Position numbers and translations under genes: made by a program. From Macrostomum lignano (Eukaryota): a DNA stretch of 64,000 bases. Shown here in pieces: positions 9,228 through 54,492 of this stretch. Within the stretch, counting starts at the first letter, position 1; every line of letters begins with the position of its first letter. The stretch is from contig NIVC01000051.1 in NCBI GenBank assembly GCA_002269645.1, positions 310,001-374,000 on the forward strand. Direction: 5' to 3'. The notes beneath the pieces were generated by a model. That model searched no databases. It saw only the letters and a program-made list of their open reading frames with translations, and had not been told where the DNA came from.

Positions 9228-11267
9228 TCAGATGTGAAATGAATTATAGTTTATGATGGATTGCAGTAGACACGTGCTATACTGAGGATGATTTAGGGGG
9301 CGCTTATAGCGCTGCCAGGTGGCTTCGAAGTCACTGTGGGCTGATTCAACAGCCTGTTCACTAAAGCTGCCAAGCCCCTTGCCATACTTGCCGCAGAACG
9401 CTGGCACATGGTCAAAAAGCGCGTGCATCTTTGGCGTAACTGAAAGCTCGAGGTACCTACATGTCGTCTGGAAGCGAGCAATGTAGAGACTGTAATCAGC
9501 TGCCAGACTTTGGCCAAAGCAAGCTTCGCGCACAGCGTTGAAGTCTTGAAGTGCTGTTGCGTAGAGCTTCAGGTGTGGAGGCAGCACGCTCCACAGCTCA
9601 CTCGCCTTCAGAAGGAGCTTTTTGCACGCTGGGCCCTCCAGGCAACCTCCATGATACTGCTGCCTGCAGATGCCTGCTTCATAGGCCCACTCGTAGGCCT
9701 TGTTGCCACCCCAGCTTGCATTGAGAGCATCAAGCAATCGGTTCACAATGCCAAGCATCATGTGCAGCTCTGGCGGTGGTACCACGTCCAGCAGTTCAGC
9801 AGAATCGCTCCCAGGTAGCAGTGGAGGCTGGACGCAATTGGCAAATTTTTTGGCTAGAGGCTGGTGTCCACCAGCTGCCTGAAACTCACTTGCCAGGTTT
9901 CGAATTGAGCCGAGCGTCCTCCTTTGTGCTGGTACTTCTCATGGAGGCCTGCCCTCACAGTACAGGCAGGGATGCGATGAAGAATGGCTCTGGATCCCGC
10001 TGATTATGTTTGCCAGTTTAAAATCGCAGGCCAACGTGAAGTAAATGGAGCTGATGTCGATGGTTGACATTAGTACACTAACGTTCTGGTAGCATTCTTT
10101 GACATCCTCAACAAGGGCCAGGATGAGGATCTTTTTCACTCCAGAGTCCATAAATCGGTTAAATTGGGCAGACGAAGTGCATCCTCTGCCATCCACGGTA
10201 ACGCTGACGCACACCTTTAAGGAATTGCCTCCTCCATCAATCGCAAGTTTCACTCTCTGGTGCATCTCAGCAGTGCCTCTCGAGTTACTGACATGCGCCA
10301 GAAAAGCGTATACATCCCGGCAGAACACGACAGACCGTTCAATCACACACTCTTGTCCATTAGGCTGTTTGCGGAAAAACTGCCGCTGCTCAGCTGTAAA
10401 AAACTTGGCGACACTCTGACCTTCAGCAAACAGAAACTCCTTCAGCCCAGACTGCACGGCCTTTTTGCTGCCGGACGCTTCTCTGATCACTTGAGCCGCA
10501 CGTAGCGTCTGACTGGTGCTGAGGTTGAGTGCAGTCTTTACGGCTCGCATAGTGCTATGCTGGACCGACGCAATCTCGGTAGTTGATGTACCAGCCACTT
10601 GAACTTGGAGTGGGCGCCCACCTGTGCCAGAAGTCAGGCTTGCAGTTGCTAAGGAGCCAGAAGAGGTGGCTACACCCAGCTTCTCACGCAGAAGACCGCA
10701 GGCTACGTGCTCCCTTGAGTAGGGGCTTAGGGCATCAAGATAGCGCAGTTTTGCCGCCTGTCCACACTGGTGCCTCAATCCACGTGCCACTGGCGATGAG
10801 CACGTCTCACAGCGTTTGACGACACTGTCTCCCATCGGCCCAGGTGCCTTATTTGGAGGGCGACCAAGTGGCGTCGCAATACCAGCAGCAGACTCATCTG
10901 GCATGAAAGGGTGATATACAGCCACATTCTTGTTGGCTCTGCTGGAGCCCACATGGCACACCCAGCAGTTGCAATCGGGGCGTTCGCGAGTGAGTGGCGG
11001 AAGACAGCGCAGATCTGCAATAACTTGCTCGTAGGGCATTTTTGGCGGCAGAGGTGTTGGTGCAGGGCTGCTTTGTGACATCAGCTTGATTCTGCAGGAG
11101 TTGCAGATGCTTAAAGGCAGAAATCCACGATGGTCAGCGAAGCCTGGCAGCACATGGCATTCAATCAGCGCTTCAAGAGTGGCTGTCAGCGGTCGGTCTC
11201 CCTTCCGAAAGCACAAGATGCACACACATCTTCGATTTTCTTCATGTGAGCGCTTGTTGTTTGGCAT
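9228..11267 (-). pseudogene. DDE transposase (about 679 codons) with one in-frame TGA at 9939-9941
   Basis: ORFs 9939..11336 and 9228..9785 are in the same frame (1551 nt apart). Reading through gives ...CLYCEGRPP*EVPAQRRTLGSIRNL...DVVPPPELHMMLG. First ATG at 11267 (MPNNKRSHEE). Candidate catalytic motifs LAIDGGG, LACDFKL, SEQAVESAH. Confidence 0.85.
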
Positions 11268-11834
11268 TGTTCTGGAGCAGCCAGTGTCGCGGTATTTTTT
11301 TATTATTATTTCTTGTATTTCTACCTGCACGCTCAATTAGTCTAATATATTGCATGCATATTTATGTAGCTCATACGTACATTCCCCCAAATTATTGATC
11401 GCCCCACCCCATATCACACTCAATCGTGTATTGTACGCTTTCACTCAGCTTATAAATGTCGACCTAGAGTATCTCACTCAAATATACCCTTTTCATTTTC
11501 ATAGCTAGTTGTCTCACTTACAGTAACTTTAATTTCAGTAAAAGTTTAGTAAAAGTGTAGCAGCTGCTGCTTGCTATTTCTTTTTGTTCTGAAGAAAACA
11601 CTGGAATTAACTTGTCTCCTAGTTCTGACTGCCTCATCATCTGGAGATGTCTATGGGCTAAATAGCTTATTGAAACAGAAAGAAAAGTCTGCAGCCAGAA
11701 TATTGAATTCAATTTATTTTGAGCCACGAGCATATACATGTAAATACGCTCGTACAATGATAAGTGTGAAGATACACGTCCTGGTGTGAATTCAGCACAA
11801 TATAGTATGCAAAAACATAATTTTCAGGTGTACA

Positions 11835-14651: not shown

Positions 14652-17600
14652 GGCGAAGGACAAGCAACAGCAGCACTGGCAGCGTCGGCGGCGGCGGCAG
14701 CAACTCGGATCTGTCGAGCAAAAAGTGCTCCAACTGTGATCTGCTTGAGAAGCAGAGCCAGCGACTTCAACAGACTATTCGCGCGTGTAAGTTCAATTAG
14801 CTGATTTTCGGTGCTAGAGCAATTGGGTCCATATGAAATTTTGCTAGACAGTAACTTCTGACCCGAATTTGCTAGCCGGATGTGTCTGCTAACCGGATGT
14901 GTCTGCTAACCGGATGTGTCTGCTAACCGGATGTGTCTGCTAACCGGATGTGTCTGCTAACCGGATGTGTCTGCTAACCGGATGTGTCTGCTAACCGGAT
15001 GTGTCTGCTAACCGGATGTGTCTGCTAACCGGATGTGTCTGCTAACCGGATGTGTCTGCTAACCGGATGTGCCTGCTAACCGGATGTGTCTGCTAACCGG
15101 ATGTGTCTGCTAACCGGATGTGTCTGCTAACCGGATGTGTCTGCTAACCGGATGTGTCTGCTAACCGGATGTGTCTGCTAACCGGATGTGTCTGCTAACC
15201 GGATGTGTCTGCTAACCGGATGTGTCTGCTAACCGGATGTGTCTGCTAACCGGATGTGTCTGCTAACCGGATGTGTCTGCTAACCGGATGTGTCTGCTAA
15301 CCGGATGTGTCTGCTAACCGGATGTGTCTGCTAACCGGATGTGTCTGCTAACCGGATGTGTCTGCTAACCGGATGTGTCTGCTAACCGGATGTGTCTGCT
15401 AACCGGATGTGTCTGCTAACCGGATGTATTTCCAGTCGGATGTGTTTCCAGTCGGATGTGTTTCCAGTCGGATGTGTCTGCTAACCGGATGTGTTTCCAG
15501 TCGGATATGTTTCCCGTCAGATGTTTTTCCAGTCGGATGTGTTTCCAGTCGGATGTGTTTCCAGTCGGATGTGTTTCCAGTTGGATGTTTTTCCAGTTGG
15601 ATGTGTTTCCAGTCGGATGTTTTTCCAGTCGGATGTGTCTGCTAACCGGATGTGTTTCCAGCCGGATGTGTTTCCAGTTGGGTGTGCTTGCTAGCAATCT
15701 GGGGTTTAGACTACAAGTTAATTTAAGTATTGGACACAAAAACACGACACTTCAGCGTTTGAAAAGTCTAGCGAGGACTCGAGAGCCAATAAAGATGAGG
15801 TGAGTTCTCACATTTAATTTTTGTTTTTTCGCCATGAATTCGGAGATTTCCAAAAGTTTAATATTTTAATGCTACAATGATTTCATTTGACTACCACACA
15901 CACTTTAGATTGAAAAGCTGAAGGCGGAACTGAGAGCTACTCAGGATGAGCTGCATCTTATAAAGCTGGGTGAGCGCAGTACCGCATTTACTTCTATAGT
16001 ACATGCACTTCGGACCACTGTGAACTATGGACTTCACTAAATACGATGTATAATCATGCTGCAAAGTTGAATAACCTAATGTTAAAAATGTCACTGAGAA
16101 TGCAGTCTGCAACGCGAGTTCACTAATAGTTTACTGAGTTCACTGCGAGCATACAGTCAATTAGTCAGAAAAGTTACTGGCGACACACTGCGAAGGCGGC
16201 TTCGATACATCTTTTTGTGACATGAGTGACTCCTTGAGTGTATATAAGCCACGCAGTTTTGGTACAATTCGGGGTTGGGCTAAACATGCGTCTTTAGCGA
16301 CGCTAGACATGGTAGCTCCAGTACAAGTAGCTCATTATTCATTAGAAATCCACCGGAGTTGTAACTGGGGGGGGGGGGGTGATGTGTCTGACTCTCCGTC
16401 GTCTGAACATTAATTTGGGGCTCGTGCACGGATATCGACCTGAACTGTGGCCTTTTCGTACGACTTACGTCTGCAAATCGTGCCTGAAGATGAGAAAGTG
16501 AGGGGCCGCTGTCCCCGCGTGAACGTGTGCCTGCTTGTGTATCTGTGTTTGAGTTTCCATGCTCATCAGGAGTCAGTGCGGAATGGGCATTACTACTTGA
16601 CTCCTCGCTGACTGCAGTCTATTGTAGCCTTGATTTTAAGCAATGCTCAAAAAACCCTCTGTGGAGGTAATAAGTAAGCGCATCATTTTTACATTACGTT
16701 TGAATTCACAGAGCGACAGCAGCTGATGGAGCACGCTGAGAGGCTGGAGAAGCAGCTAGAATGGAGCCTCATCTATCATCAAGCAGCAGAGAGCGCCTGC
16801 GCCGATCTCGCCATTGAAGCCCGTCGGGTGAAAACTCGAAGTTGCGCCGTTTTAGGCCACCTCATGCTGCAGGGCGTTAGCGAGAGCGCCGATGACGATG
16901 GAGGCAGCGTCGTTGGCAGAACCGGCGGAGAAAGACGCAATCTCACAGACAGTTTCTGCTGTTCCAGCGTTGTTGACGCCATCGAAGAGCTAATCCAGGA
17001 CACCGAGTCTTCGTCGTCTGACTCGGAAGATTGGTCAATGGACCAGGCAGCTGGTAGTGAGCAGTTGGCGCAGGATGACGCACAGGATGCGCTGCGGAAG
17101 GCCAGGCAAGATCTGGAGCTCCGCAGACCGGAGAGGTTGCAAGCACTGCGACGATTGACCATGCTGATGCAGGAGCACGACGCGGATTTTAAAGTGGCTC
17201 GAAAGGAGCAGCCTGAATATTCGCGAAAAGCTATTGAGCTGTCTCAAGAACAGGAAAAACAGTTCGGACATCCTGTTGAGCCATTAGAGCAGAAGCAGCA
17301 GGCGAAAGAACAAAATGAACAACTTCGAGAAGCTATTGAGCCAAGTCGACAGCTGATTGGACAAGCTCGAAATCTTAAAAAGTCTCGAGAACTCATCAGG
17401 CAACCCGGAGAGCTCATTGATCAACCTGGAGAACGAAATGATCAACCAAGAGAACAGGATGAGCAACCTCGAGAACAGGATGAGCAACCTCGAGAACAGG
17501 ATGAGCAACCTCGAGAACAGGATGAGCAACCTCGAGAACAGGATGAGCAACCTCGAGAACAGGATGAGCAACCTCGAGAACAGGATGAGCAACCTCGAGA

Positions 17601-19348
17601 ACAGGATGAGCAACCTCGAGAACAGGATGAGCAACCTCGAGAACAGGATGAGCAACCTCGAGAACAGGATGAGCAACCTCGAGAACAGGATGAGCAACCT
17701 CGAGAACAGGATGAGCAACCTCAAGATCAGGTTGGGAAATCTCAAGAACAGGATGAGAACCTTCGAGAACAGGTTGAGAAACCTCGAGAAACGGATATTC
17801 GGCGTCCAGAACAAGATCAACAACCCCAGGAACAGGGTGAGAAACCCTATCAACAAGACGAACAGCACAACGAACAGGATGAGCAAACTCATAAATCTCA
17901 AGAGAACGAACAGATTATTGAACCGCAAGAACCGACAAAACGTGCCCAAGAAGAACACGAAAAAGAGGAGCCAAACCTTCTGGACTTGGTAAAAGTGTTG
18001 CAGCCTTTTCAGTACATGCATATTGTGTCCATCAGCGTTCGTATACAATCAATAACCCACGAAAGTCATCGTTTTTTTCTTCAGAAAGTAAACAAGCCCG
18101 CAGGCCTAGTAGAAGCCATGCTAGAACGGGTGAGGCAGTCCCTGACGCAGCAGCAGCAAAACCAGCAACAGTCAGATGGCACTGAAACTGAAATATCAAG
18201 AAACTGCGATTGCTGCAAAAGCCTATTGAACTCTTTGCTTTCGGATCTGTTGCAATTAAGGAGTTGTAAGTTAATCGGCTGATTAAGAATCAGTTTCCAA
18301 TCTGATTTATGAATTTAATGTATGCAGGAAAGATCTATAAAATTAGCTGCAGTTTGCTGTCATGAGGCTTGATTTTTTTATTTACACCTCATAAATAATA
18401 GTGGCCGTCATGGTGTAATGCACCGTCGGCAACTCCAGCATCCGTACCGAGTTTTATTGTCCACAGCGCACATGAGATCCCTTCAGTAACGTACTTTGTT
18501 GTTTGTAACATCCGTTACAATTCGTACTTTTCACAGACATCTGCCGACATCGACAACAACTACTGGAGCTTCAGGAGCAAATTCAAGCTCTGAAAACGCG
18601 ACCTCCGCCGCCTCCGCCACCACCGCCGCCACCGCCACCACCGCCGCCGCCAGCGCCTGTGCTTCGGCGACCAATAAACTCTATCAAGAGAATGGCAGGA
18701 GCTCAGCAGACAGGTATTTTCGAAAATTGTACAGTTTGAAGTCAGTTAAGTCGAATTTCACTGTGTAACAAAAGCAATGGATAAAAATCTGACAACAATA
18801 CCCGAATCCATGACATCTGACACCTGAATATCTTGACATCTTTAACTCCATCAGAGGGGGGGTTGTTTCAAGGGGTTCCAACTTAAGAAGCTCGAAGTTA
18901 GGACAGGCAATTCTGGCTATGGGAGTTCTATCCCCCTTCTTCTCCAAAGGAGGAGTTGGCCTCGTCTGTATGGCCTTATTGTCGTAAGACCAAACTTAGC
19001 TTTATAAAACACCCCTCAGCCGGCGGTAACCCGACGAACTTTGACACGGCTCTCGTCGACAGTTTGAAATCGGAGCTGAAGGCTGCGCTGAAAGGCCGCG
19101 GTCGGATCCTCCGACCAGTGCAGGACGCCAACCCGACAGGGGAGAAGAAGGAGCCAGAGGGCATGCAGTTCGCGCTGCGACACCGAGGCAGCAGCGGTGG
19201 CAGCGGCCGCGGCGGAAGTCACGATGCCGGATCCGGCGTGACGGATCCGCAGCTGCAGAAGCGACTGGAGAGAATTAGAAGGCGACTGTCCACTTACATG
19301 CCGGCAGTTGGCGAGCTCAAGGAGGTGGATGAACCCCAACAGTTCTAA
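14652..19348 (+). CDS. Shootin-1-like coiled-coil / poly-proline / WH2-type actin-associated protein, at least 7 exons, 5' end not found
   Basis: Phase-consistent GT-AG exons 14652-14786, 15756-15799, 15909-15969, 16712-17988, 18085-18265, 18537-18713, 19020-19348 (at least 734 aa). Coiled coils, then a 17-proline run followed by ...RPINSIKRM, then LKAALKGRGRILRPV and LERIRRRL. This order recalls shootin-1 (poly-P-NPIRSL, helix+HLRPV, ELERILRRR). Family call is from remembered motifs. Confidence 0.6.
14874..15680. repeat. Intronic composite minisatellite: about 32 x 17-bp (TGTGTCTGCTAACCGGA), then 16-bp (TGTGTTTCCAGTCGGA) units
   Basis: Direct periodicity, unit switch at about 15420, a few 17-mers interspersed afterwards. 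Confidence 0.95.
16405..16600 (+). mobile_element. Degenerate SINE-related fragment sharing a central domain with the SINE at 33971-34331
   Basis: Shared blocks in the same order: ACATTAATTTGGGGCT, AGGG(G)CCGCTGT, TGTGCCTGC, CAGG(G)AGTC.G.GCGGAATGGGCA. Confidence 0.55.
17443..17715 (+). repeat. Coding 21-bp tandem repeat, 13 x QPREQDE
   Basis: CAACCTCGAGAACAGGATGAG units in frame within the large exon. Confidence 0.95.
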
Positions 19349-25355: not shown

Positions 25356-25889
25356 GGTGTAGCCCTCGCCAAGCTTAGGCGCCTGTTTGGCAGCCGTCAA
25401 TGCAAACTGCTTCTAGTAGGACTAGACAATGCTGGCAAAACCACTGTACTCTACCAGCTAGTGCTGGGCGAAACTGTCCATATTGCTCCAACTATAGGAT
25501 CCAATGTTGAAGAGTTGCAATGGCGTGGACTGAAATTTTTATTGTGGGATCTTGGTGGACAGAGTTCAGTGCGGTCTACCTGGGAGTCATATTACTCTGG
25601 CACAGATTTTGTCATACTGGTTGTTGATTCCTCAGACCGGAAGCGTCTTGAACTGATTAAATCCGAGCTGTACAGTATGCTGTCATCCGATCAGCTGCGC
25701 AAGGCATCCCTATTGGTTCTAGCTAATAAGCAGGATGTTGCTGACAGGTTAACTGCAGCCGAGATTAGTCGAGCACTAGACCTCACCTGTCTGCGCTGCA
25801 GGCCTTGGCATATTCAAGCTTGCTGCGCCTTGAGCGGAGAAGGTCTCACAGCGGCTATGGAATGGCTGGTTTGTCAGGCAAAGGTTTAA
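25356..25889 (+). CDS. ARL5: ARF-like GTPase 5 (main coding exon; initiator ATG in an unlocated upstream exon)
   Basis: TTTTCAG acceptor at 25355, then GVALAKLRRLFGSRQCKLLLVGLDNAGKTT (P-loop), PTIGSNVEE, WDLGGQ, NKQD, WHIQACCALSGEGL. PTIGSNVEE and WHIQxCCAL are ARL5-type motifs. Confidence 0.9.
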   Translation, partial: GVALAKLRRLFGSRQCKLLLVGLDNAGKTTVLYQLVLGETVHIAPTIGSNVEELQWRGLKFLLWDLGGQSSVRSTWESYYSGTDFVILVVDSSDRKRLELIKSELYSMLSSDQLRKASLLVLANKQDVADRLTAAEISRALDLTCLRCRPWHIQACCALSGEGLTAAMEWLVCQAKV

Positions 25890-31058: not shown

Positions 31059-33160
31059 ATGAAGCGAGCCAACCCACAGTTCGCAACTCCTTCTCTGGGT
31101 TCATCCGAGGTCAGCACTGACCCCTGCCTGCTAGATCGAAAGCGTCTGAGGCCCACCGCTGCGGCCTCTGCAGCTCCAAACAGATTAAAGTCTATGACTA
31201 AACAGTTGAGCAGTAGTAGTCTCGTAATTCGCAAGGATGCTGCACTGCAGCGGAAGCAGCTGCATCCTATGCAGCAAGTTGAACCGCCCTATCTACCCAC
31301 GTCTAGCACTGGCCGCGGCCGAGCTGACAATTCTCAAGTCCGCGTACAATTGCTGCCTGTTCAGGCTGAGAATATTCGACTCCAATCAATGGCCACTTCT
31401 CGCTTTCGAACTCATATCTGGCGTCACGGTCCATCGCAGGCTATGTCGCGATCACAGTCTACCGCCTGTCTAGTTCGGTCCCGGTCTCCGTCCCAGCCGC
31501 ATCCCTCTCGACCTCACTTGTCCCTATCCCATGCTGTGCGGTCGCAGTCCCCGCCAGTGACTAGATCCCAATCTCCATCAGTGACTAGATCCCAATCTCC
31601 ATCAGTGACTAGATCCCAATCTCCATCAGTGACTGGATCCCAATCTCCATCAGTGACTAGATCCCAGTCTCCGTCAGTGACTGGATCCCAATCTCCGTCA
31701 GTGACTAGATCCCAATCTCCGTCAGTGACTAGATCCCAATCTCCATCAGTGACTAGATCCCAGTCTCCGTCAGTGACTGGATCCCAATCTCTGTTAGTGA
31801 CTGGATCCCAATCTCCATCAGTGACTAGATCCCAATCTCCGTCAGTGACTGGATCCCAATCTCCGTCAGTGACTAGATCCCAATCTCCGTCAGTGACTAG
31901 ATCCCAATCTCCGTCAGTGACTAGATCCCAATCTCCGTCAGTGACTAGATCCCAATCTCCATCAGTGACTAGATCCCAATCTCCATCAGTGACTAGATCC
32001 CAATCTCCGTCAGTGACTGGATCCCAATCTCCGTCAGTTACTAGATCCCAATCTCCGTCACTGCTTAGATCCGGGCCCCAGTCCCGGGTAAGGGCAAGAT
32101 CTCAATCGCCGTCCCGGCCGCCCCGGTCGCTATTCAAGTGCCGACGACACTCGCCGTCGCGGTCCCAGACGGGCCAGTCGCGGCCGACGCGTCGGGTTCG
32201 CTTCGCCGATCAGATTCGCGCGTTTCTATTCGAACGCGCCCTCGGCTTCTCCTGCGTCCCCAGTCGCGGTAGCGTCGGCCTTGGCATGCAGTTGAACCAT
32301 TGCGCCGTTGAGTCGCTGGCTCCGCATGATCGGCCAGTCGATGATAATAACAGTAGTAGCAGCACCGGCTATTCGGCAGCGTTCGGTTTCCGTTTAGCCG
32401 AAGACGGCCAAGCTCTGTCGCCGTTGCCAGTTAGATCGCGTCGCCAACTGCTGCGAGAGTCCGGCGTCCGACGTGCGGACTCGGCGGAGGAGCGGGCGGA
32501 GTGCCGGTTAATAAGGGCTAGCCGGGAGCGCTGCGGCTGCGACTGTCCAGACGGTTGCATTCTGGGCGTTTGTCCGTGCGCCGGAGACGAGATTCCTTGT
32601 CAGGTAAGCGAGGCCTATGGCGGTACATCTGTAGTCCCGGGTGACACCTTACTGGCCAACAATTTTCTCTTAGCTTTTGGTAAACAAACTGAAAATAAAA
32701 CCGGGAAGAAGCACTGCAACGATGTGGTATCGGTTAAAAAATTCTTAAATAAGCCAAGCCAAGTCCTTAGGTGGCAGAGGTAGCTCAGCGTTAAACTGAG
32801 CTAGGCGGCAGTGCCCAAAGCTACTGGCAAAATGACTTGCTCACCAAACGAGTCCATTCTCATTCAAATTCTTTCAAGGTTGACCGCGCCGGGTTTCCGT
32901 GCGCCTGCGCCCGGCCCGAGGCCTGCGCCAATCCGGCTGGCCGGCTTGAGTTCAACCCGTCGCGAGTTCGAGCTCACTATGTGCACACCGCCCACCGGCT
33001 CAGTCTGGAGTCTGAGCAGCAACAGGCAGACCTGTTCACACCAGACGGTTCGTGTTCGGTGTGCGCCGATGTTGACAACGTCCAAGATCAGTGTTCTACA
33101 ATGCCATTGACTGGCGCACCTCTTCTGACTGCTGCTAACGACATGCCAACAGCTACCTGA
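31059..33160 (+). CDS. CSRNP: Cysteine/serine-rich nuclear protein (CSRNP/Axud1 family), 2 coding exons, 608 aa
   Basis: Exons 31059-32603 and 32879-33160 (phase 0). RRVRF..., LGFSCVPSRGSVGLGM, RRQLLRESGV, IRASRERCGCDC, CQ|VDRAGFPCAC, CANPAGRLEFNPSRVRAHY match the CSRNP core. Confidence 0.9.
31557..32060 (+). repeat. Coding 24-bp tandem repeat, 21 x VT(R/G)SQSPS
   Basis: GTGACTAGATCCCAATCTCC(A/G)TCA units in frame in the CSRNP N-terminal region. Confidence 0.95.
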
Positions 33161-35303: not shown

Positions 35304-37921
35304 ATGTCGGACGGCTCAGAGAAGGGCAAAGGCAAAGGCGCCGGAAAGAAGAAGGCCGGAGGAACCGAGGGTAAGGAAGTAATTTCTGGTAGTTTCTGGT
35401 TGAATTTTATTCGGCGTAAAATTCTCTGTAAGAGTCCAAACGAGATGGTCAGTGGTATAATCACTCATGATATTCACGAGTATTCGGATGCCATAGCTCG
35501 GTCATTGAAGGGGTCGCTACTTGTCAGGCTAAATAGTGTATCATTTCGACTCGAAGTTCACTTAAAGTACATCATGCGTAGTGTCAACTCTGCTTATTGC
35601 AATTCCACACCAGGCCTGGGCCGTTCGTCTATGCAGAAGAACGGCGATGGTACCCTGGTCATGCCCAGATTCTACGATCTGCTTCCAACTGCCAATCTGC
35701 GCAAAGAGATGAACAACTACTTGGATTTGGACGTGCTGTTTATGAAGCTAAAGTACAATCAATTTTATAACCGAGCTACAGACAACGCCGTGAAGACAGG
35801 CAAATCTAAGCCAGAGAATGTCGGATTCGAGGGCAGGCCGTGAGTGCAACAGCTTGCATTCAATTGGTCCTGCATTATATTTAATCCCGTCTTAGCATAA
35901 TCAAAGCTGTGCGGGTACATACTCTTTATACCCTGTAGTTTTTGCCAATATTACCCTGTTGAACTGCTTTTTCGTGTTTTAAACCAAGTAGTTGGTAAAA
36001 TTCTTTGATTCTCGACAACCCTAAAGAAAAATCTAAAAGACTCTAGAAATAAAACTTTTCCTCCTCAAGGTTGAGGACAATTTACAAGTACATGAAACTA
36101 ATGCATGTCGACTCTGGATCAGCATAGTTCCCGGTAGTTCCCAGTAAGCCAGTTAAACAGACATACGAGACGCTGATCTCAAATTCGTATACGAAATCCG
36201 ACAGACTGACCATCGTTTGGGACGATGATACGCGCGAGGACAACAAGTTGAACGGCTACCGAATCATCGCTCTGCTCATGGCGGTGCGCTACTGCCTAGT
36301 GCAGCACATGGCCTGCGAGGAATGCGAAGGTCCGGCCTTTGTGTTCACCGATTTGCACGGTCAGCACTCAGATCAGCTGCGCTGGTTTTTCCTGTTCGGC
36401 GGACCCGAGCAGCAGAATGTCTACAATTACGTCATCTGCGGCGACTCCGTCGATCGTGGACCGCGCCAGATGGAGACCACACTGCTGCTGCTGTACTACA
36501 AGCTGCGCTATCCGACCCGAATGTTCTTTCTTAAAGGCAATCACGAAGATTTTGATATGCACGAGCACTACGGCTTTATGGACGAAGTGCGCAATCGGTG
36601 AGTATAGCTCTTGTACTGCTTGTTCTTATTATTCTACAAGTAAATCCAAATGTTCTCTGACGCTTTCCCAAGCACTCTAGACTCTAATTGTAACTCTAGG
36701 GTGTCCGTGCTCTATACATGTACACCTAACGTAAGGATATTTGTTACCCAAACCATTTGGATAATCAATTCATCTTGTCGTCGGTTAATACGAGTAATTT
36801 TCAATAAAATGTAAACAACTTGGCATTAGACGCTTCTGACACATCTACATGTATTTTAAATTTTAGCTGCTCCGAAAACGCCGGCAACAATGCCGCCCTC
36901 TACGACCTGTCATTCAACAACATGTACTACATGTTTGTGCACGTATTCGACTACCTGCCGTCCGTGTGCATCTTAGACAGAAAAATCTACTGCGTACACG
37001 GCGGCATCTCGCCGATACTTACCATGTGTCACACGTGCCGCGCCGGCACCGGCAAAAGTCGAATTGTTGACATCTGCGAGATACCGGATCACATGTCGTC
37101 TAGTCAGACTGTCGACTACCTGATTGACCTAATTAATACCAGGGTGAAGAATCCTAGCGAAATTGGCGACGCTTACGTCAAAGACAAGGGTGAGATGCTG
37201 CCTGAGATGACTTGAGAAAGAAAAGAGCATTACGTATTATGAACCTATAATCAATATTTAATTCAAACAGAGGTGCTTCGTGACGTCATCAGTACAAAGA
37301 CCTTCGAAACGTACGGCTTCTTATTGTCTGACCTTCTGTGGTCGGATCCGTCGGTGGTAAAAGGCACGACCGGACCCAACGATCAGAAGTGGCATCAGAG
37401 CAAAGGCTGGATATTTAACAACGATCGAAAGATCTCCTACATTTTTGGTACCAACGTTATTGAGAAGTTTCTGAACTCTTGGCAGTTAAACTTGATTATT
37501 CGCGGTGAGTGGTTATTGGAATGTGCGAACATCACTAACGACCAGTTACTTTCCAACACACGTACAACACTGTCTTTTCCGAATGGTCCCAAAACGAGAG
37601 TTAGTGTATCGTACCAAAGACCTAAATGTTATAATCTTTTATTAGCAATCAGAATGAACAGCATTTCTTATGTGTTTCACATAAACTGCGTTTAATCTAC
37701 ATTGAACCTCAAAAAATGTGACAGGTCACGATGTGCGCATGACTGGCTACGAATGGCACTATAAGAAGAACCTGATCACGGCATTCTCGGCCCCAGGCTA
37801 CACTGGCAAGTCCAACAAAGGCTGCGTTGCTATGGTCTCGGTGAAACGCGACGACGATACCAAGCGCAAGGTTCGTGTCGATCCCATTGTGCTGGACAAG
37901 ATCACTCGCGTCAATAATTAA
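35304..37921 (+). CDS. Divergent PPP-family (PP1-like) Ser/Thr phosphatase, 6 exons, 479 aa
   Basis: Exons 35304-35370, 35614-35839, 36205-36597, 36867-37189, 37271-37504, 37725-37921 join in phase (exon 2 acceptor is least certain). Motifs TDLHG, GDSVDRG, GNHE, HGG, DLLWSDP, RG|H, SAPGY. Confidence 0.88.
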
Positions 37922-38364: not shown

Positions 38365-38738
38365 TGGCGCCCCTTGGTGCTGGCGCCCCTTGGTGCTGGC
38401 GCCCCTTGGTGCTGGCGCCCCTTGGTGCTGGCGCCCCTTGGTGCTGGCGCCCCTTGGTGCTGGCGCCCCTTGGTGCTGGCGCCCCTTGGTGCTGGCGCCC
38501 CTTGGTGCTGGCGCCCCTTGGTGCTGGCGCCCCTTGGTGCTGGCGCCCCTTGGTGCTGGCGCCCCTTGGTGCTGGCGCCCCTTGGTGCTGGCGCCCCTTG
38601 GTGCTGGCGCCCCTTGGTGCTGGCGCCCCTTGGTGCTGGCGCCCCTTGGTGCTGGCGCCCCTTGGTGCTGGCGCCCCTTGGTGCTGGCGCCCCTTGGTGC
38701 TGGCGCCCCTTGGTGCTGGCGCCCCTTGGTGCTGGCGC
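38365..38738. repeat. GC-rich 16-bp minisatellite (GGCGCCCCTTGGTGCT)
   Basis: About 23 perfect copies; source of five overlapping ORFs. Confidence 0.97.
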
Positions 38739-40198: not shown

Positions 40199-42366
40199 AT
40201 GGTTCGAATAATGCGTCGCATTATGTACTACGCTCGGCTTGGAAGATCACACTACCGGCTAATGTGGACGCTAATTATATGCGTGCCGATAGTGTACGTG
40301 TTTCTGGAGCTACTCCGGCAGCCGAATCTCATCAAGAAGCGCTTTCATCCGTTGCAAATCAAACAGGACGTTGTGCTCTCTGGGGCCAAGGAGGATACTG
40401 AAAGTCTCTGCATTCTGCCGCCCCTTCAACAGCAGTTAATATCGGCGAGACCGTTGTACACACTGAACTGCACTGCTGCCGAGCCTAACTGGGTCACGTC
40501 CGAGGGCGGCACTTTTCGGATTACGGACGCTACACGCAGCGCATATCCTGACGTCAAGTGCGCCATGGTGCCCGTATTGCGTGACGACGATTTCTCCGTC
40601 TACTACGGTGAAGCTGTCGATGATATATCGACGAATAGGCAACTAATCAACGACTTCTTTGTTGCTAACTGCGCCAGTGAGCAAAGATCGAAGCAGTACC
40701 AACTGTTGCACGCGGGTATAGCGCCAAAGCTATCTAAGGAGGCGCCGTACATCAAACAGAACCAAAAGCCGTTAAGCATAATTCTTTTCGGCCTGGATTC
40801 AGTATCGCGAGAAGCCTGGAAGCGCTACCTGCCAAAGTCGTACGGCTACTTTATTAACGACATTGGCGGCGTCGTGTTCGAAAAATTCAACATCCTAGGT
40901 GACGGCACGACGCCAAATCTGCTGCCAATGCTGACTGGCCATCTGGAGAGCGAACTGTACGAATCGCGTCGGGGTTTTAACAATTCGAAACCCGTCGACG
41001 ATTATCCGTGGATCTGGCGCGACCTGGCGGCTAAGAACTACACAACCCAGTTTGGCGAGGACGGTTCTAAATACGGCACTTTCCAGTACCGACTGCTGGG
41101 CTTTAAGAAGCAGCCTACTGATCACTATATGCGACCATTCTATCTGAAGCTTGATGAACTCTATCCGCACCGGAAGTACGGCTGCCTGGGCTCTAAGCCG
41201 CTTCATCAAGTGAAAATCGATTGGCAGAAGGACTTCCTGGACGTGTATCGGAACCGCAAGAAGTTTACCTTTGTGTTTCACTCCGAGTTGAGCCACGAAG
41301 ACAACTATTACCTAAGCCCGATGGACGCCGATCTATTGGCTTATCTGCGCTATCTGAAAGAATCTAAACACCTGGATGATTCCATACTGATACTTATGTC
41401 CGACCATGGCCACCGTTATGCCAAGACGCGATCAACGCTTCAAGGAAAATATGAAGAGCGCCTGCCCTTTCTAGGCATAGCCTTACCCAAGCGTCTGAAA
41501 GACGCTCATCCTATAGAGACCAAACAGCTAATAAAAAATCAAAATCGCCTGATTACACCGCTTGATTTGCACGCAACGATGCGGCATGCTGCCGAATTTT
41601 TTACGCCCCAGCCGCCGCCGCAGCATCAGGAGAACACAAAGACCACTAGTAAACGCGAGGCCGGCGTCAGCCTTTTTACGCCAATTTCAGAGAAGCGCAA
41701 TTGCGCTCAAATAGGCATCGAAGCGCATTGGTGCGCTTGCCTTGCCTGGCAGTCGCTCAGTCCGTTGGGCACTAACGTCAAAACGATTGGTTATTACGTT
41801 GTAGCGCAGTTCAATGCGCAAACTGAGAAGCATCGAGATCAATGCGCCGAGTTGACCTTCTCCAAGCTGCTTGCCGTGGATGGATACGCACCATCGACTA
41901 AGATTCTCTCCTTCAAGGTAGGTAAAATTTTTAAGGAAGAAATCAGGATCGTATTACGCGTATAGCAGAGGGAAGAGATAGAATCAATTTAGGGCAGGAA
42001 GTGATGCTCTACTCTCGACTGCAGGCAAAAATCAACACCCGACACTATTTGTTACAGGCAAGCGCAGACGCGGACGGTAGAAATCCGGACTTCTCGGACA
42101 CGATGTCGGCCGGCTATCGACTATATCGGCTCACAATTGAGACGCTGCCTAATCATGGCCACTACGAGGTGACGGTGCAAGAGGACATTGCTAGTCACCG
42201 ACTGAGCATGGATATAAATAGTGTTAGTCGGGTGAACGCCTATCGTCAACAAGCCGCCTGTCTAGGTGATAAGTTGCCTCATCTAAGAGCGCTTTGCTAT
42301 TGTCTGCATCAGAAATCGGAAGAGCAGAAAGCTGTAAAGTCGGGTTCCGGAGCTTCTATCAAGTAG
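40199..42366 (+). CDS. DUF229-family protein (alkaline phosphatase/sulfatase superfamily), N-terminal membrane anchor, 2 exons, about 675 aa
   Basis: Exons 40199-41917 and 42058-42366 (phase 0). Hydrophobic WTLIICVPIVYVFL, GLDSVSR, GDGTTPNL, SELSHED, MSDHGHR, EERLP, HWCAC. Confidence 0.88.
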
Positions 42367-48849: not shown

Positions 48850-50500
48850 TCTCTCTTCGATCCCTCTCTCTTCGATCTATCACCCTCTCTCCCCGATCTA
48901 TCAACCTCTCTCCCTGATCTATCTCCCTCTCTCCCCGATATATCTCCCTCTCTCTTCAATCTATCTCGCTCTCTCCCCCGATCTATCTCCCTCTCTCCCC
49001 GATCTATCTCGCTCTCTCCCCCGATCTATCTCCCTCTCTCCCCGATCTATCTCGCTCTCTCCCCGATCTATCTCCCTCTCTCCCCGATCTATCTCCCTCT
49101 CTCCCCGATCTATCTCCCTCTCTCCCCGATCTATCTCCCTCTCTCTTCGATCTATCTCCCCCTCTCCCCGATCTATCTCCCTCTCTCCCCGATCTATCTC
49201 CCTCTCTCCCCGATCTATCTCCCTCTCTCCCCGATCTATCTCCCCCTCTCCCGATCTATCTCCCTCTCTCCCCGATATATCTCCCTCTCTCTTCAATCTA
49301 TCTCGCTCTCTCCCCCGATCTATCTCCCTCTCTCCCCGATCTATCTCCCTCTCTCCCCGATCTATCTCCCTCTCTCCCCGATCTATCTCGCTCTCTCCCC
49401 CGATCTATCTCCCTCTCTCCCCGATCTATCTCGCTCTCTCCCCGATCTATCTCCCTCTCTCCCCGATCTATCTCGCTCTCTCCCCCGATCTATCTCCCTC
49501 TCTCCCCGATCTATCTCGCTCTCTCCCCCGATCTATCTCCCTCTCTCCCCGATATATCTCCCTCTCTCTTCAATCTATCTCGCTCTCTCCCCCGATCTAT
49601 CTCCCTCTCTCCCCGATCTATCTCGCTCTCTCCCCCGATCTATCTCCCTCTCTCCCCGATCTATCTCGCTCTCTCCCCCGATCTATCTCCCTCTCTCCCC
49701 GATCTATCTCCCTCTCTCCCCGATCTATCTCCCTCTCTCCCCGATCTATCTCCCTCTCTCTTCGATCTATCTCCCCTCTCCCCGATCTATCTCCCTCTCT
49801 CCCCGATCTATCTCCCTCTCTCCCCGATCTATCTCCCTCTCTCCCCGATCTATCTCCCCCTCTCCCGATCTATCTCCCTCTCTCCCCGATATATCTCCCT
49901 CTCTCTTCAATCTATCTCGCTCTCTCCCCCGATCTATCTCCCTCTCTCCCCGATCTATCTCCCTCTCTCCCCGATCTATCTCCCTCTCTCCCCGATCTAT
50001 CTCCCTCTCTCCCCGATCTATCTCCCTCTCTCCCCGATCTATCTCCCTCTCTCCCCGATCTATCTCCCTCTCTCCCCGATCTATCTCCCTCTCTCCCCGA
50101 TCTATCTCCCTCTCTCCCCGATCTATCTCCCTCTCTCTTCGATCTATCTCCCCCTCTCCCCGATCTATCTCCCTCTCTCCCCGATCTATCTCCCTCTCTC
50201 CCCGATCTATCTCCCTCTCTCCCCGATCTATCTCCCCCTCTCCCGATCTATCTCCCTCTCTCCCCGATATATCTCCCTCTCTCTTCAATCTATCTCGCTC
50301 TCTCCCCGATCTATCTCCCTCTCTCCCCGATCTATCTCCCTCTCTCCCCGATCTATCTCCCTCTCTCCCCGATCTATCTCCCCCTCTCCCCGATCTATCT
50401 CCCTCTCTCTTCGATCTATCTCCCTCTCCCTCGATCTATCAACCTCTCTCCCCGATCTATCTCCCTCTCTCTTCAATCTATCTCCCTCTCTCTCCGATCC
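48850..50500. repeat. Pyrimidine-rich 21-bp minisatellite (CCCCGATCTATCTCCCTCTCT)
   Basis: About 75-80 copies with recurring variant blocks. Confidence 0.96.
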
Positions 50501-52579: not shown

Positions 52580-53045
52580 ATACTCAGGTGACAGACATCC
52601 TGCTCTCGGATACTCAGGTGTGATTGATTGCAGACATCCTGCACTAAGATGCTCAGGTGGGATTGCAGACATCCTGCACTCTGATACTCAGGTGTGATTG
52701 CAGACATCCTGCTCTCGGAGACTCAGGTGTGATTGCAGACATCCTGCTCTCGGAGACTCAGGTGTGATTGCAGACATCTCGCACTCAGATACTCAGGTGT
52801 GATTGCAGACATCCTGCACTCAGATACTCAGGTGGGATTGCAGACATCCTGCACTCTGATACTCAGGTGGGATTGCAGACATCCCGCACTCTGATACTCA
52901 GGTGTGATTGCAGACATCTCGCACTCAGATACTCAGGTGTGATTGCAGACATCCTGCTCTCGGTGACTCAGGTGTGATTGCAGACATCCTGCTCTCGGAG
53001 ACTCAGGTGTGATTGCAGACACCCTGCACTCAGATGCTCAGGTGC
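52580..53045. repeat. 35-bp minisatellite (ACTCAGGTGTGATTGCAGACATCCTGCTCTCGGAG)
   Basis: About 13 copies. Confidence 0.93.
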
Positions 53046-53269: not shown

Positions 53270-53889
53270 TTAGTACATAGAAGGCTCTTCCTGAACAATA
53301 GCTGATCGCTTGCCGAATCTGGCGTAGCCGCGTTTCCCGAATCTGGCGTAGCCGCGTTTCCCGAATCTGGCGTAGCCGCGCTTCCCGAATCTGGCGTAGC
53401 CGCGCTTCCCGAATCTGGCGTAGCCGCGCTTCCCGAATCTGGCGTAGCCGCGCTTCCCGAATCTGGCGTAGCCGCGCTTCCCGAATCTGGCGTAGCCGCG
53501 CTTCCCGAATCTGGCGTAGCCGCGCTTCCCGAATCTGGCGTAGCCGCGCTTCCCGAATCTGGCGTAGCCGCGCTTCCCGAATCTGGCGTAGCCGCGCTTA
53601 TCCAACGTGTCAAAGTCTCTTAGCAAACGCGTTTGTACGACGTCGCTATCTGTCAAAGAAAAAGTTCCATAGCTGTTGACATTTGGCTGCACTAAAGACA
53701 GCGACTGCGACTAAGGAAAGCAAAGCAATAACCCTAACCCCATCCCTAAGCATAAACTAAAAACTAAAACCGAGTACCAAACAATTCATGTGGGTAATAA
53801 AAAGTGTCACCTGTATCTTCTTGCGCAAGAGACGGCACGCTGAAGAACGCAATCAGCACCGCGGCCAGCAGACCCCACAAAAAGTTCAT
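53270..53889 (-). CDS. FMRFamide-like neuropeptide precursor: signal peptide + 12 x GYARFamide, 152 aa
   Basis: Exons 53889-53811 (MNFLWGLLAAVLIAFFSVPSLAQEDT, donor G|GTGACA) and 53649-53270 (acceptor TTTCTTTGACAG), phase 1. Twelve KR-GYARF-G-KR cassettes give dibasic cleavage sites and a Gly amidation donor. Confidence 0.93.

Positions 53890-53976: not shown

Positions 53977-54492
<516 letters not shown>

What the first reader, a model, noticed from the sequence alone, without database searches (positions are those of the whole stretch)
53270..53889. Complete precursor for 12 identical copies of GYARFamide
Seen: signal peptide in a separate exon missed by the ORF track, a short acidic pro-region and 12 KR-flanked GYARFG cassettes. 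The 24-bp units are almost identical at nucleotide level, including synonymous sites. Established: GYIRFamide/YIRFamide are flatworm FMRFamide-like myoactive peptides. Inference: this is an Ile-to-Ala variant whose copy number is kept or expanded by recent slippage or conversion, so peptide dose may be a VNTR polymorphism.
Basis: partly seen in the sequence, partly recalled or inferred. Interest (0 to 1): 0.7.

Follow-up and report, generated by a model that had tools for sequence, protein, structure and literature searches.

The report
Flatworm GYARFamide neuropeptide precursor gene

Summary
On the minus strand, exon 1 (53889-53811) supplies the ATG and a 22-residue signal peptide. A 161-nt GT..AG intron follows. 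Exon 2 (53649-53270) supplies an acidic pro-region, 12 abutting KR-GYARF-G cassettes and a short C-terminal peptide, giving 152 aa in all. Ten of the twelve 24-nt units are identical, and all three differences are synonymous.

The window is Macrostomum lignano: a neighbouring gene is 100% identical to a UniRef entry of that species. Searches of 5.8 billion and 1.84 billion proteins found only two true relatives, both M. lignano UniProt models. A0A1I8JRL5 is named "FMRFamide-related neuropeptides" and uses the same splice junction. A0A1I8IXZ7 is fused to a retroelement ORF. Both are frameshifted within the same repeat and carry about 14 and about 20 units.

The gene call is therefore right and the database annotation already exists. 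No paper in the held library mentions GYARFamide.

Still untested are orthology to the planarian YIRFamide gene (spp-11, three spaced copies), amidation, muscle activity and copy-number polymorphism among individuals. Multi-copy amidated-peptide precursors with variable copy number are well known. Interest is modest.

The parts
53811..53889 (-). Exon 1: start codon, signal peptide, and the first 4 1/3 codons of the pro-region (QEDT + g)
   Evidence: ATG at 53889 with A at -3 and an in-frame TGA five codons upstream. The same N-terminus occurs in M. lignano A0A1I8JRL5 and A0A1I8IXZ7, with one V/A difference.
53824..53889 (-). Signal peptide coding part, MNFLWGLLAAVLIAFFSVPSLA (22 aa). Predicted cleavage is SLA|QED.
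   Evidence: the Kyte-Doolittle 9-residue mean peaks at 3.1 over residues 7-15 and falls below 0 after residue 17. Small residues at -3 (S) and -1 (A) fit the von Heijne rule. No dedicated signal-peptide predictor was available.
53650..53810 (-). Intron, 161 nt, phase 1, GT..AG
   Evidence: GTGACA...TTTTTCTTTGACAG. The junction restores the frame. The same junction is used in UniProt model A0A1I8JRL5.
53270..53649 (-). Exon 2: rest of the pro-region, the peptide array, the C-terminal peptide and the stop codon
53600..53649 (-). Acidic pro-region (with the exon-1 part: QEDTDSDVVQTRLLRDFDTLD), ending at the first KR
   Evidence: It is identical in A0A1I8JRL5.
53312..53599 (-). Array of 12 x 24 nt, each unit encoding KR-GYARF-G. 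Predicted product: 12 x GYARF-NH2.
   Evidence: Ten units are identical; units 11 and 12 carry only synonymous changes.
53270..53311 (-). Final KR, C-terminal peptide SAIVQEEPSMY, and stop codon TAA (53272-53270)
   Evidence: KRSAIVQEEPS is shared with A0A1I8JRL5.

Best explanation
The locus is an intact FMRFamide-like peptide (FLP) preprohormone gene of Macrostomum lignano.

Shown by the sequence:
- A two-exon, 152-aa open reading frame.
- An N-terminal hydrophobic signal sequence.
- An acidic pro-region.
- Twelve abutting cassettes, Lys-Arg / Gly-Tyr-Ala-Arg-Phe / Gly.
- A C-terminal 11-mer.

Inferred from the established rules of neuropeptide processing:
- Signal peptidase cuts after SLA.
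- A PC2-type convertase cuts after each KR.
- A carboxypeptidase removes the K and R.
- Peptidylglycine alpha-amidating enzymes use the Gly as amide donor.
- One precursor therefore yields 12 molecules of GYARF-NH2 ([M+H]+ 612.325).

Inferred by analogy with GYIRFamide/YIRFamide in other flatworms:
- The peptide is released from neurons.
- It acts on a rhodopsin-type GPCR on muscle (G protein, then PKC, then voltage-operated Ca2+ channels) to excite contraction.
- It is probably the antigen, or one of the antigens, seen by the GYIRFamide antiserum used to stain the M. lignano nervous system.

Inferred for the array:
- It is a coding minisatellite kept homogeneous by replication slippage, unequal exchange or conversion.
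- This happens in a genome where a quarter of the sequence is tandem repeat.
- The length of the array differs between the copies of the gene that M. lignano carries.
For: - Anatomy.
- Repeat statistics: 98% matches; 12 matches against 0.05 expected.
- Grammar: this is the only stop-free stretch in the window (of at least 40 codons, six-frame scan) with more than four G[KR][KR] sites. It has 12. The next best have 4 and 3, both in purine-rich low-complexity sequence.
- Variation between units: all three differences are synonymous. Only 17 of the 72 possible single-base changes in the unit are synonymous, so p is about 0.013 for three independent events, or about 0.056 if the shared AAG>AAA counts once.
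- Independent model: UniProt A0A1I8JRL5 (M. lignano, 'FMRFamide-related neuropeptides') has the same signal peptide, the same exon junction, and the same pro-region and C-terminus. Its repeat region is the same 24-nt unit read in all three frames.
- Second copy: A0A1I8IXZ7.
- Organism.
- M. lignano DV1 carries three subgenomes, so three paralogues are expected (PMC12896417).
- M. lignano has a neuronally expressed, essential PC2 homologue (PMC4490696).
- A GYIRFamide antiserum labels its nervous system (PMC2717932).
- FLP signalling through GPCR and PKC to Ca2+ channels, and a GYIRFamide GPCR in Girardia: PMC2919380.
- Tandem-repeat richness of the window: 29 arrays covering 26% of it.
Against: - No transcript, peptide or expression data could be examined here. 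Splicing rests on sequence logic plus a database gene model of a paralogue.
- Pfam FARP (PF01581) does not hit the precursor, whereas it scores 29.3 bits on Smed-spp-11. An Ala-to-Ile control still scores below the cutoff, so this test is weak.
- No canonical AATAAA lies within 320 nt downstream of the stop.
- From memory, not checked here: alanine substitution within YIRFamide lowered potency on schistosome muscle (Day et al. 1997, Peptides 18:917). Activity of GYARFamide therefore cannot simply be assumed from GYIRFamide.
- This may be only one of three homeologous copies, and which copy is expressed is unknown.
Confidence: 0.88

Rival explanations
1. The array is a non-coding 24-nt minisatellite that merely happens to be open in a frame resembling a neuropeptide precursor. 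The exon 1 to exon 2 join is then a coincidence.
For: The window is 26% tandem repeat. Many repeat-derived ORFs of more than 110 aa exist. Five of the six frames are open across this array.
Against: - The unit encodes the complete minimal processing cassette (KR, 5 residues ending in RF, Gly) 12 times, and no other stretch in the window does.
- An in-frame signal-peptide exon with canonical GT..AG lies 161 nt upstream.
- The non-repetitive flanks (signal peptide, pro-region, C-terminus) are conserved in two other M. lignano copies.
- The differences between units are all synonymous.
Confidence: 0.02
2. The gene is real, but this copy is a redundant homeologue left by the recent whole-genome duplication. 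It would be silent or weakly expressed, with another copy supplying the peptide.
For: Nearly all DV1 genes exist as three paralogues (L1, L2, S; PMC12896417). Two other copies are recorded. This copy lies between a (GATA)n microsatellite about 90 nt upstream of the ATG and a 35-nt minisatellite about 225 nt downstream of the stop, which may affect its regulation.
Against: This copy is fully intact, whereas the other two models are the frameshifted ones. Its only variation between units is synonymous.
Confidence: 0.1
3. The near-perfect identity of the units and the count of 12 are partly products of assembly or polishing. The real locus would be more heterogeneous or of a different length.
For: M. 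lignano assemblies are reported to contain copy-number errors and collapsed haplovariants (PMC12896417). The older gene models of the paralogues are visibly riddled with frameshifts.
Against: The array is only 288 nt, far shorter than a long read. It is exactly in frame, and it keeps two distinct variant units at one edge. That is not what collapse or over-polishing typically gives.
Confidence: 0.07
4. The peptide does not act through a GYIRFamide-type GPCR. It acts on another target, for example a peptide-gated DEG/ENaC channel, or it has a non-muscular role.
For: Three M. lignano DEG/ENaC genes close to the FaNaC branch did not respond to FMRFa, YMRFa or two Wamides. GYARFamide was not among the peptides tested (PMC9234716).
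Against: All functional data on flatworm FLPs point to G-protein/PKC coupling (PMC2919380). There is no positive evidence for a channel target.
Confidence: 0.08

Closest known systems
Macrostomum lignano UniProt models A0A1I8JRL5 ('FMRFamide-related neuropeptides', 191 aa) and A0A1I8IXZ7 ('RNase H domain-containing protein', 789 aa)
   Same: Same species. Signal peptide identical except V18A. Same exon junction, pro-region and C-terminus (A0A1I8JRL5). Same 24-nt GYARFG unit.
   Different: Both models shift between the three frames of the repeat (SAATPDSG, ARLRQIRE), so neither shows the clean precursor. They carry about 14 and about 20 units rather than 12. The 5'-UTR-derived extension of A0A1I8JRL5 differs from the window, so these are other loci (homeologues or alleles), not this one. 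A0A1I8IXZ7 is fused to a retroelement ORF.
Smed-spp-11 (Schmidtea mediterranea) and Sma/Sja-npp-23 (Schistosoma): YIRFamide prohormones
   Same: Flatworm FLP precursors with a signal peptide and KR-(x)Y-x-RF-G-KR cassettes. The peptide differs only at the residue before Arg (Collins 2010, PMC2953531 supplement).
   Different: spp-11 has 3 copies of YIRFG separated by unrelated spacer peptides, and npp-23 has one copy. Here there are 12 abutting copies with an N-terminal Gly and Ala in place of Ile. No similarity outside the motif was found. Neither search with the M. lignano protein retrieved spp-11 (it was not among the 150 listed hits). Only the artificial GYIRFG bait did.
GYIRFamide / YIRFamide / RYIRFamide (peptides isolated from the triclads Girardia tigrina, Bdelloura candida and Arthurdendyus triangulatus)
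   Same: Pentapeptide G-Y-x-R-F-NH2. Expected myoexcitatory action through GPCR/PKC/Ca2+ channels (PMC2919380). A GYIRFamide antiserum stains M. lignano neurons (PMC2717932).
   Different: Ala instead of the branched hydrophobic Ile. No isolation, synthesis or bioassay of GYARFamide was found in the held literature (0 papers).
Cnidarian multi-copy preprohormones (Antho-RFamide, GPRGamide and others)
   Same: Many identical copies of a short amidated RFamide-type peptide on one precursor. Copy number differs between related species, 5-50 copies (PMC7523074).
   Different: Unrelated lineage and peptide. From my own knowledge, N-terminal processing in cnidarians is at acidic rather than dibasic sites. 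Here every cassette has classical KR on both sides.
M. lignano FMRFa/YMRFa propeptide Mlig001796.g3
   Same: A second RFamide precursor of the same species (PMC9234716).
   Different: A different gene with different peptides.

Membership tests
FMRFamide-like peptide (FLP/FaRP) preprohormone | N-terminal signal peptide | tested here: met
   Hydrophobic core over residues 3-16 and S-L-A at -3..-1. This is hydropathy plus the -3/-1 rule only; no SignalP was available.
FMRFamide-like peptide (FLP/FaRP) preprohormone | One or more peptides ending in Arg-Phe, followed by a Gly amide donor and bounded by basic cleavage sites | tested here: met
   12 x KR-GYARF-G-KR, read directly from the sequence.
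FMRFamide-like peptide (FLP/FaRP) preprohormone | Match to the Pfam FARP model PF01581 | tested here: inconclusive
   No hit at E<=10 for the window protein. The positive control Smed-spp-11 scores 29.3 bits against a cutoff of 15.5. An Ala-to-Ile version of the window protein scores only 11.4 bits (12 copies) or 14.7 bits (2 copies), still under the cutoff. The 11-position model is therefore a poor test for abutting repeats.
FMRFamide-like peptide (FLP/FaRP) preprohormone | Homology to a protein annotated as FLP precursor | tested here: met
   A0A1I8JRL5, 'FMRFamide-related neuropeptides', E=1.6e-50. That name is an automatic annotation, not an experiment.
FMRFamide-like peptide (FLP/FaRP) preprohormone | Mature amidated peptide present in tissue; neuronal expression | not testable with these tools
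   Needs peptidomics (m/z 612.325) and in situ hybridisation.
Flatworm YIRFamide gene (spp-11 / npp-23 orthology group) | Encodes (x)YIRFG | tested here: not met
   All 12 copies read GYARFG.
Flatworm YIRFamide gene (spp-11 / npp-23 orthology group) | Detectable sequence similarity or shared architecture beyond the peptide motif | tested here: not met
   spp-11 has 3 copies with spacers. spp-11 was not retrieved with the M. lignano query (not among the 150 listed hits). Such precursors evolve too fast for this to exclude orthology.
Flatworm YIRFamide gene (spp-11 / npp-23 orthology group) | No separate YIRFamide gene in the same genome (so that GYARFamide could be its replacement) | tested here: inconclusive
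   A 12-copy G/R-YIRFG bait found no M. lignano protein at E<=1. A single-copy gene would not reach significance.
Coding minisatellite / VNTR | Head-to-tail units of at least 10 nt with high identity | tested here: met
   Period 24, 12.2 copies, 98% matches, no indels.
Coding minisatellite / VNTR | Length variation among individuals of the species | not testable with these tools
   Only 12, about 14 and about 20 units in three different M. lignano gene copies or models. These are probably homeologues from one inbred line.

The most novel reading that the evidence does not exclude
GYARFamide is a macrostomid-specific natural Ala-for-Ile FLP with a co-evolved receptor. Its array length (12, about 14 and about 20 units in the three M. 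lignano gene copies) has diverged since the recent genome duplication and still varies among individuals, so peptide yield per transcript would be a heritable, rapidly mutating quantity. GYARFamide might also be the missing ligand of the M. lignano DEG/ENaC channels that did not respond to FMRFa or YMRFa.
Probability: 0.25. Interest if true: 0.45.

Novelty: new member of a known kind. Interest (0 to 1): 0.3.

Why it matters
It gives a clean, intact reference model for an M. lignano FLP gene that public protein databases hold only as two frameshifted, partly mis-fused models.

It names a concrete candidate (GYARF-NH2) for the 'GYIRFamidergic' immunoreactivity widely used as a neural marker in this regeneration and ageing model.

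It offers a natural position-3 (Ile to Ala) variant for ligand-receptor structure-activity work on flatworm FLP receptors, which are discussed as anthelmintic targets.

The different array lengths in the three gene copies could make a small, tractable case of coding-minisatellite evolution after a recent whole-genome duplication.

None of this changes the current picture of neuropeptide genes.

Tried and rejected
- Literature search for GYARFamide, YARFamide and GYARFG: 0 papers. Every 'GYARF' hit was a Hungarian surname or place name.
- McVeigh et al. 2009 (PMC2749192), the paper most likely to list M. lignano FLPs, is not held. Prior description there cannot be excluded.
- Exact-protein look-ups for the exon-2 ORF, A0A1I8JRL5 and A0A1I8IXZ7 in the contig collection: nothing on record. 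No DNA of the paralogous loci and no transcript contigs could therefore be obtained.
- Exhaustive HMMER search of 1.84 billion representatives: 401 hits. Apart from the two M. lignano proteins, the roughly 90 hits inspected were low-complexity repeats or unrelated precursors such as orcokinin/pedal-peptide-like and PMRFamide-like.
- P0161 looked like the nearest architecture (tandem G-x-[VI]-RFG-KR after a signal peptide). It lies on a bacterial contig among PFL-like, DeoR and GGDEF/EAL genes, so it was rejected as chance.
- A degenerate DNA pattern for two GYARFGKR units in 241 million metagenome records: 0 hits.
- Rfam on the whole window: no RNA family.
- Pfam FARP as a membership test proved uninformative.
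- Structure prediction was not attempted, because the precursor is a processing substrate and not a folded domain.

Full report
**Observation**

Read on the minus strand, the region holds an ATG at 53889. It is preceded by an in-frame TGA five codons upstream and has an A at -3. It is followed by MNFLWGLLAAVLIAFFSVPSLAQEDT.

Exon 1 ends at 53811 before GTGACA. After 161 nt the sequence TTTTTCTTTGACAG ends at 53650, and exon 2 starts at 53649. Joining 53811 to 53649 restores the frame and gives a 459-nt CDS of 152 aa:
- a signal peptide;
- QEDTDSDVVQTRLLRDFDTLD;
- 12 x KR-GYARF-G;
- KR-SAIVQEEPSMY and a stop codon.

Coordinates of each part were re-translated.

TRF finds period 24, 12.2 copies, 98% matches and no indels at 53307-53599. 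A 17-nt core of the unit occurs 12 times, against 0.05 expected from dinucleotide shuffles.

Units 1-10 are identical. Unit 11 differs by AAG>AAA, and unit 12 by AAG>AAA and GGG>GGC. All three changes are synonymous, whereas only 17 of the 72 possible single-base changes in the unit would be. The variant units sit at the 3' edge of the array, and a degenerate partial unit (AAGCGA) follows. That is the pattern expected when the interior of an array is homogenised by unequal exchange or slippage.

The exon-2 frame has no ATG upstream of the repeats, and unspliced exon 1 terminates after 41 codons. The splice is therefore required for any secreted product.

**Is it more than chance?**

The question is a fair one in this genome. 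Twenty-nine tandem arrays with TRF score of at least 150 cover 26% of the window. Many repeat-derived ORFs exceed 110 aa. Five of the six frames are open across this very array. Openness is therefore worthless as evidence.

What distinguishes the locus is its grammar. In a six-frame scan of stop-free stretches of at least 40 codons, it is the only one with more than four G[KR][KR] sites. It has 12. The runners-up have 4 and 3, both in purine-rich low-complexity sequence.

The grammar is joined to an in-frame signal-peptide exon through canonical splice sites. The non-repetitive flanks are also conserved in other copies of the gene, as described below.

**Organism and relatives**

The 588-aa ORF at 40199-41965 (DUF229/sulfatase) is 100% identical over 98% of its length to Macrostomum lignano A0A1I8GVD2. 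The next best hit is 45% identical. The window is therefore M. lignano.

The word-indexed search of 5.8 billion proteins with the spliced precursor returned a single protein, A0A1I8JRL5 of M. lignano. It is named 'FMRFamide-related neuropeptides' and scored E=1.6e-50. It contains MNFLWGLLAAVLIAFFSAPSLAQEDTDSDVVQTRLLRDFDTLDKRGYARFG... and ends ...GYARFGKRSAIVQEEPS. So it uses exactly the predicted exon junction.

Its middle part reads SAATPDSG and ARLRQIRE. These are the other two frames of the same 24-nt unit. The model is therefore frameshifted several times within the array, whether through assembly errors or real lesions. The segment between DKR and SAIV is 111 residues, about 14 units.

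The exhaustive HMMER search of 1.84 billion representatives with the exon-2 translation added one more true relative, A0A1I8IXZ7 of M. lignano. It has the same signal peptide, about 20 units that are again frameshifted, and then reads on into a retroelement ORF with an RNase H domain.

Both of these models have Ala where the window has Val at residue 18. The 5' extension of A0A1I8JRL5 also differs from the sequence upstream of the window's ATG. They are therefore other loci. M. lignano DV1 is a neopolyploid in which nearly all genes have three paralogues, on subgenomes L1, L2 and S (PMC12896417). Three versions is thus the expected number. This assignment is inference.

The roughly 90 other hits that I inspected were low-complexity proteins or unrelated neuropeptide precursors. 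The one with a similar architecture, P0161, lies on a bacterial contig and was dismissed. A degenerate DNA pattern for two cassettes found nothing in the metagenome collection.

**How it most likely works**

Shown: the sequence has every element of a classical preprohormone.

Inferred from the established processing pathway:
- signal peptidase cleaves after SLA;
- a prohormone convertase cleaves C-terminal to each Lys-Arg;
- a carboxypeptidase trims the basic residues;
- the Gly is converted to a C-terminal amide;
- one precursor therefore yields 12 GYARF-NH2 ([M+H]+ 612.325), an acidic N-terminal peptide and SAIVQEEPSMY.

M. lignano has a PC2 homologue expressed in the nervous system, and knocking it down is lethal (PMC4490696).

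By analogy with GYIRFamide and YIRFamide, the peptide is expected to be a neuronal myoexcitatory transmitter. It would act through a GPCR, PKC and voltage-operated Ca2+ channels. A GYIRFamide GPCR is known from Girardia tigrina (PMC2919380).

A GYIRFamide antiserum labels a defined set of M. lignano neurons (PMC2717932; PMC4490696). No M. lignano protein with several YIRFG copies was found. GYARFamide is therefore a plausible antigen. This too is inference.

**Comparison with what is known**

The planarian YIRFamide prohormone Smed-spp-11 has three YIRFG copies separated by unrelated spacers. Schistosome npp-23 has one copy (PMC2953531 supplement). The M. lignano gene differs in three ways:
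- Ala in place of Ile;
- an N-terminal Gly on the peptide;
- 12 cassettes with no spacers at all. Each cassette is the minimum possible 8 residues, and together they make up 96 of the 152 residues.

Nothing outside the motif aligns, so orthology with spp-11/npp-23 can be neither shown nor excluded.

Pfam FARP (PF01581) hits spp-11 at 29.3 bits but not the M. lignano precursor. Replacing Ala by Ile in a control raises the score only to 11-15 bits, still under the 15.5-bit cutoff. This test is inconclusive rather than negative.

Precursors carrying many identical amidated peptides, with copy numbers that differ between related species, are common. Cnidarian examples range from 5 to 50 copies (PMC7523074). 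Molluscan FMRFamide genes are another example, from my own knowledge.

M. lignano also has a separate FMRFa/YMRFa propeptide, Mlig001796.g3 (PMC9234716).

**The VNTR idea**

The nucleotide identity of ten units argues for recent expansion or ongoing homogenisation. Array lengths of 12, about 14 and about 20 units in the three gene copies show that length has changed on a short time scale. There are two caveats: two of these numbers come from error-laden models, and the copies are probably homeologues rather than alleles.

The window also holds other in-frame coding minisatellites:
- 21-nt units encoding EQDEQPR at 17418-17790;
- 24-nt units encoding SQSPSVTR at 31551-32072, inside a CSRNP_N-domain protein.

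Coding repeat expansion therefore looks like a property of this genome and not something special to the neuropeptide gene. Polymorphism among individuals remains untested.

**Novelty and verdict**

The gene family is already in UniProt for this species under an automatic FLP name, but only as garbled models. The held literature has no mention of GYARFamide. The most relevant paper, McVeigh et al. 2009, could not be read.

I class the finding as a new member of a known kind: a real, intact and unremarkable FLP preprohormone. Two mildly interesting aspects remain, the natural Ala variant and the array-length divergence between homeologues.

Noticed in passing
window 53981-54492 and 52592-53044: The gene is tightly bracketed by repeats. 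A (GATA)n microsatellite of about 127 copies ends about 90 nt upstream of the ATG. A 35-nt minisatellite (12.8 copies, 90% matches) starts about 225 nt downstream of the stop. Whether they lie in the promoter or the UTRs is unknown.
   Followed up: no
whole window: 29 tandem-repeat arrays with TRF score of at least 150 cover about 26% of the 64 kb. One is a perfect 16-nt array (38365-38738, 23.4 copies, 100% matches) and one is a 1.6-kb 21-nt array (48861-50499).
   Followed up: partly
window 31059-32783 (+), repeat at 31551-32072: A long ORF with a CSRNP_N domain (cysteine/serine-rich nuclear protein, E=2e-26) contains 21.8 in-frame copies of a 24-nt unit encoding SQSPSVTR. It is another coding minisatellite with the same period as the GYARF array.
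   Followed up: partly
window 16726-18282 (+), repeat at 17418-17790: A 518-aa ORF rich in Glu and Gln, with no Pfam hit, carries 17.8 in-frame copies of a 21-nt unit encoding EQDEQPR.
   Followed up: no
window 40199-41965 (+) and 42001-42366 (+): An intronless-looking DUF229/sulfatase-like gene is 100% identical to M. lignano A0A1I8GVD2, which has 675 aa. The UniProt model is longer than the 588-aa ORF, so a further exon (perhaps the ORF at 42001-42366) probably belongs to it.
   Followed up: partly
window 25461-25889 (+); 36248-37695 (+): An Arf/Arl-family small GTPase exon (Pfam Arf, E=2e-48), and several exons of a calcineurin-like/PPP-type metallophosphatase.
   Followed up: no
window 9228-11336 (-): Two adjacent long ORFs (465 and 185 aa) have no Pfam hit. 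The first starts with a Cys-rich, zinc-finger-like segment. Possibly a transposon-derived gene.
   Followed up: no
UniProt A0A1I8IXZ7 (P0125), not in the window: In another M. lignano copy, the gene model leaves the precursor right after ...GKRSAI and continues into a retroelement ORF with an RNase H domain. This is either a retroelement insertion at the 3' end of that copy or a mis-joined gene model.
   Followed up: no
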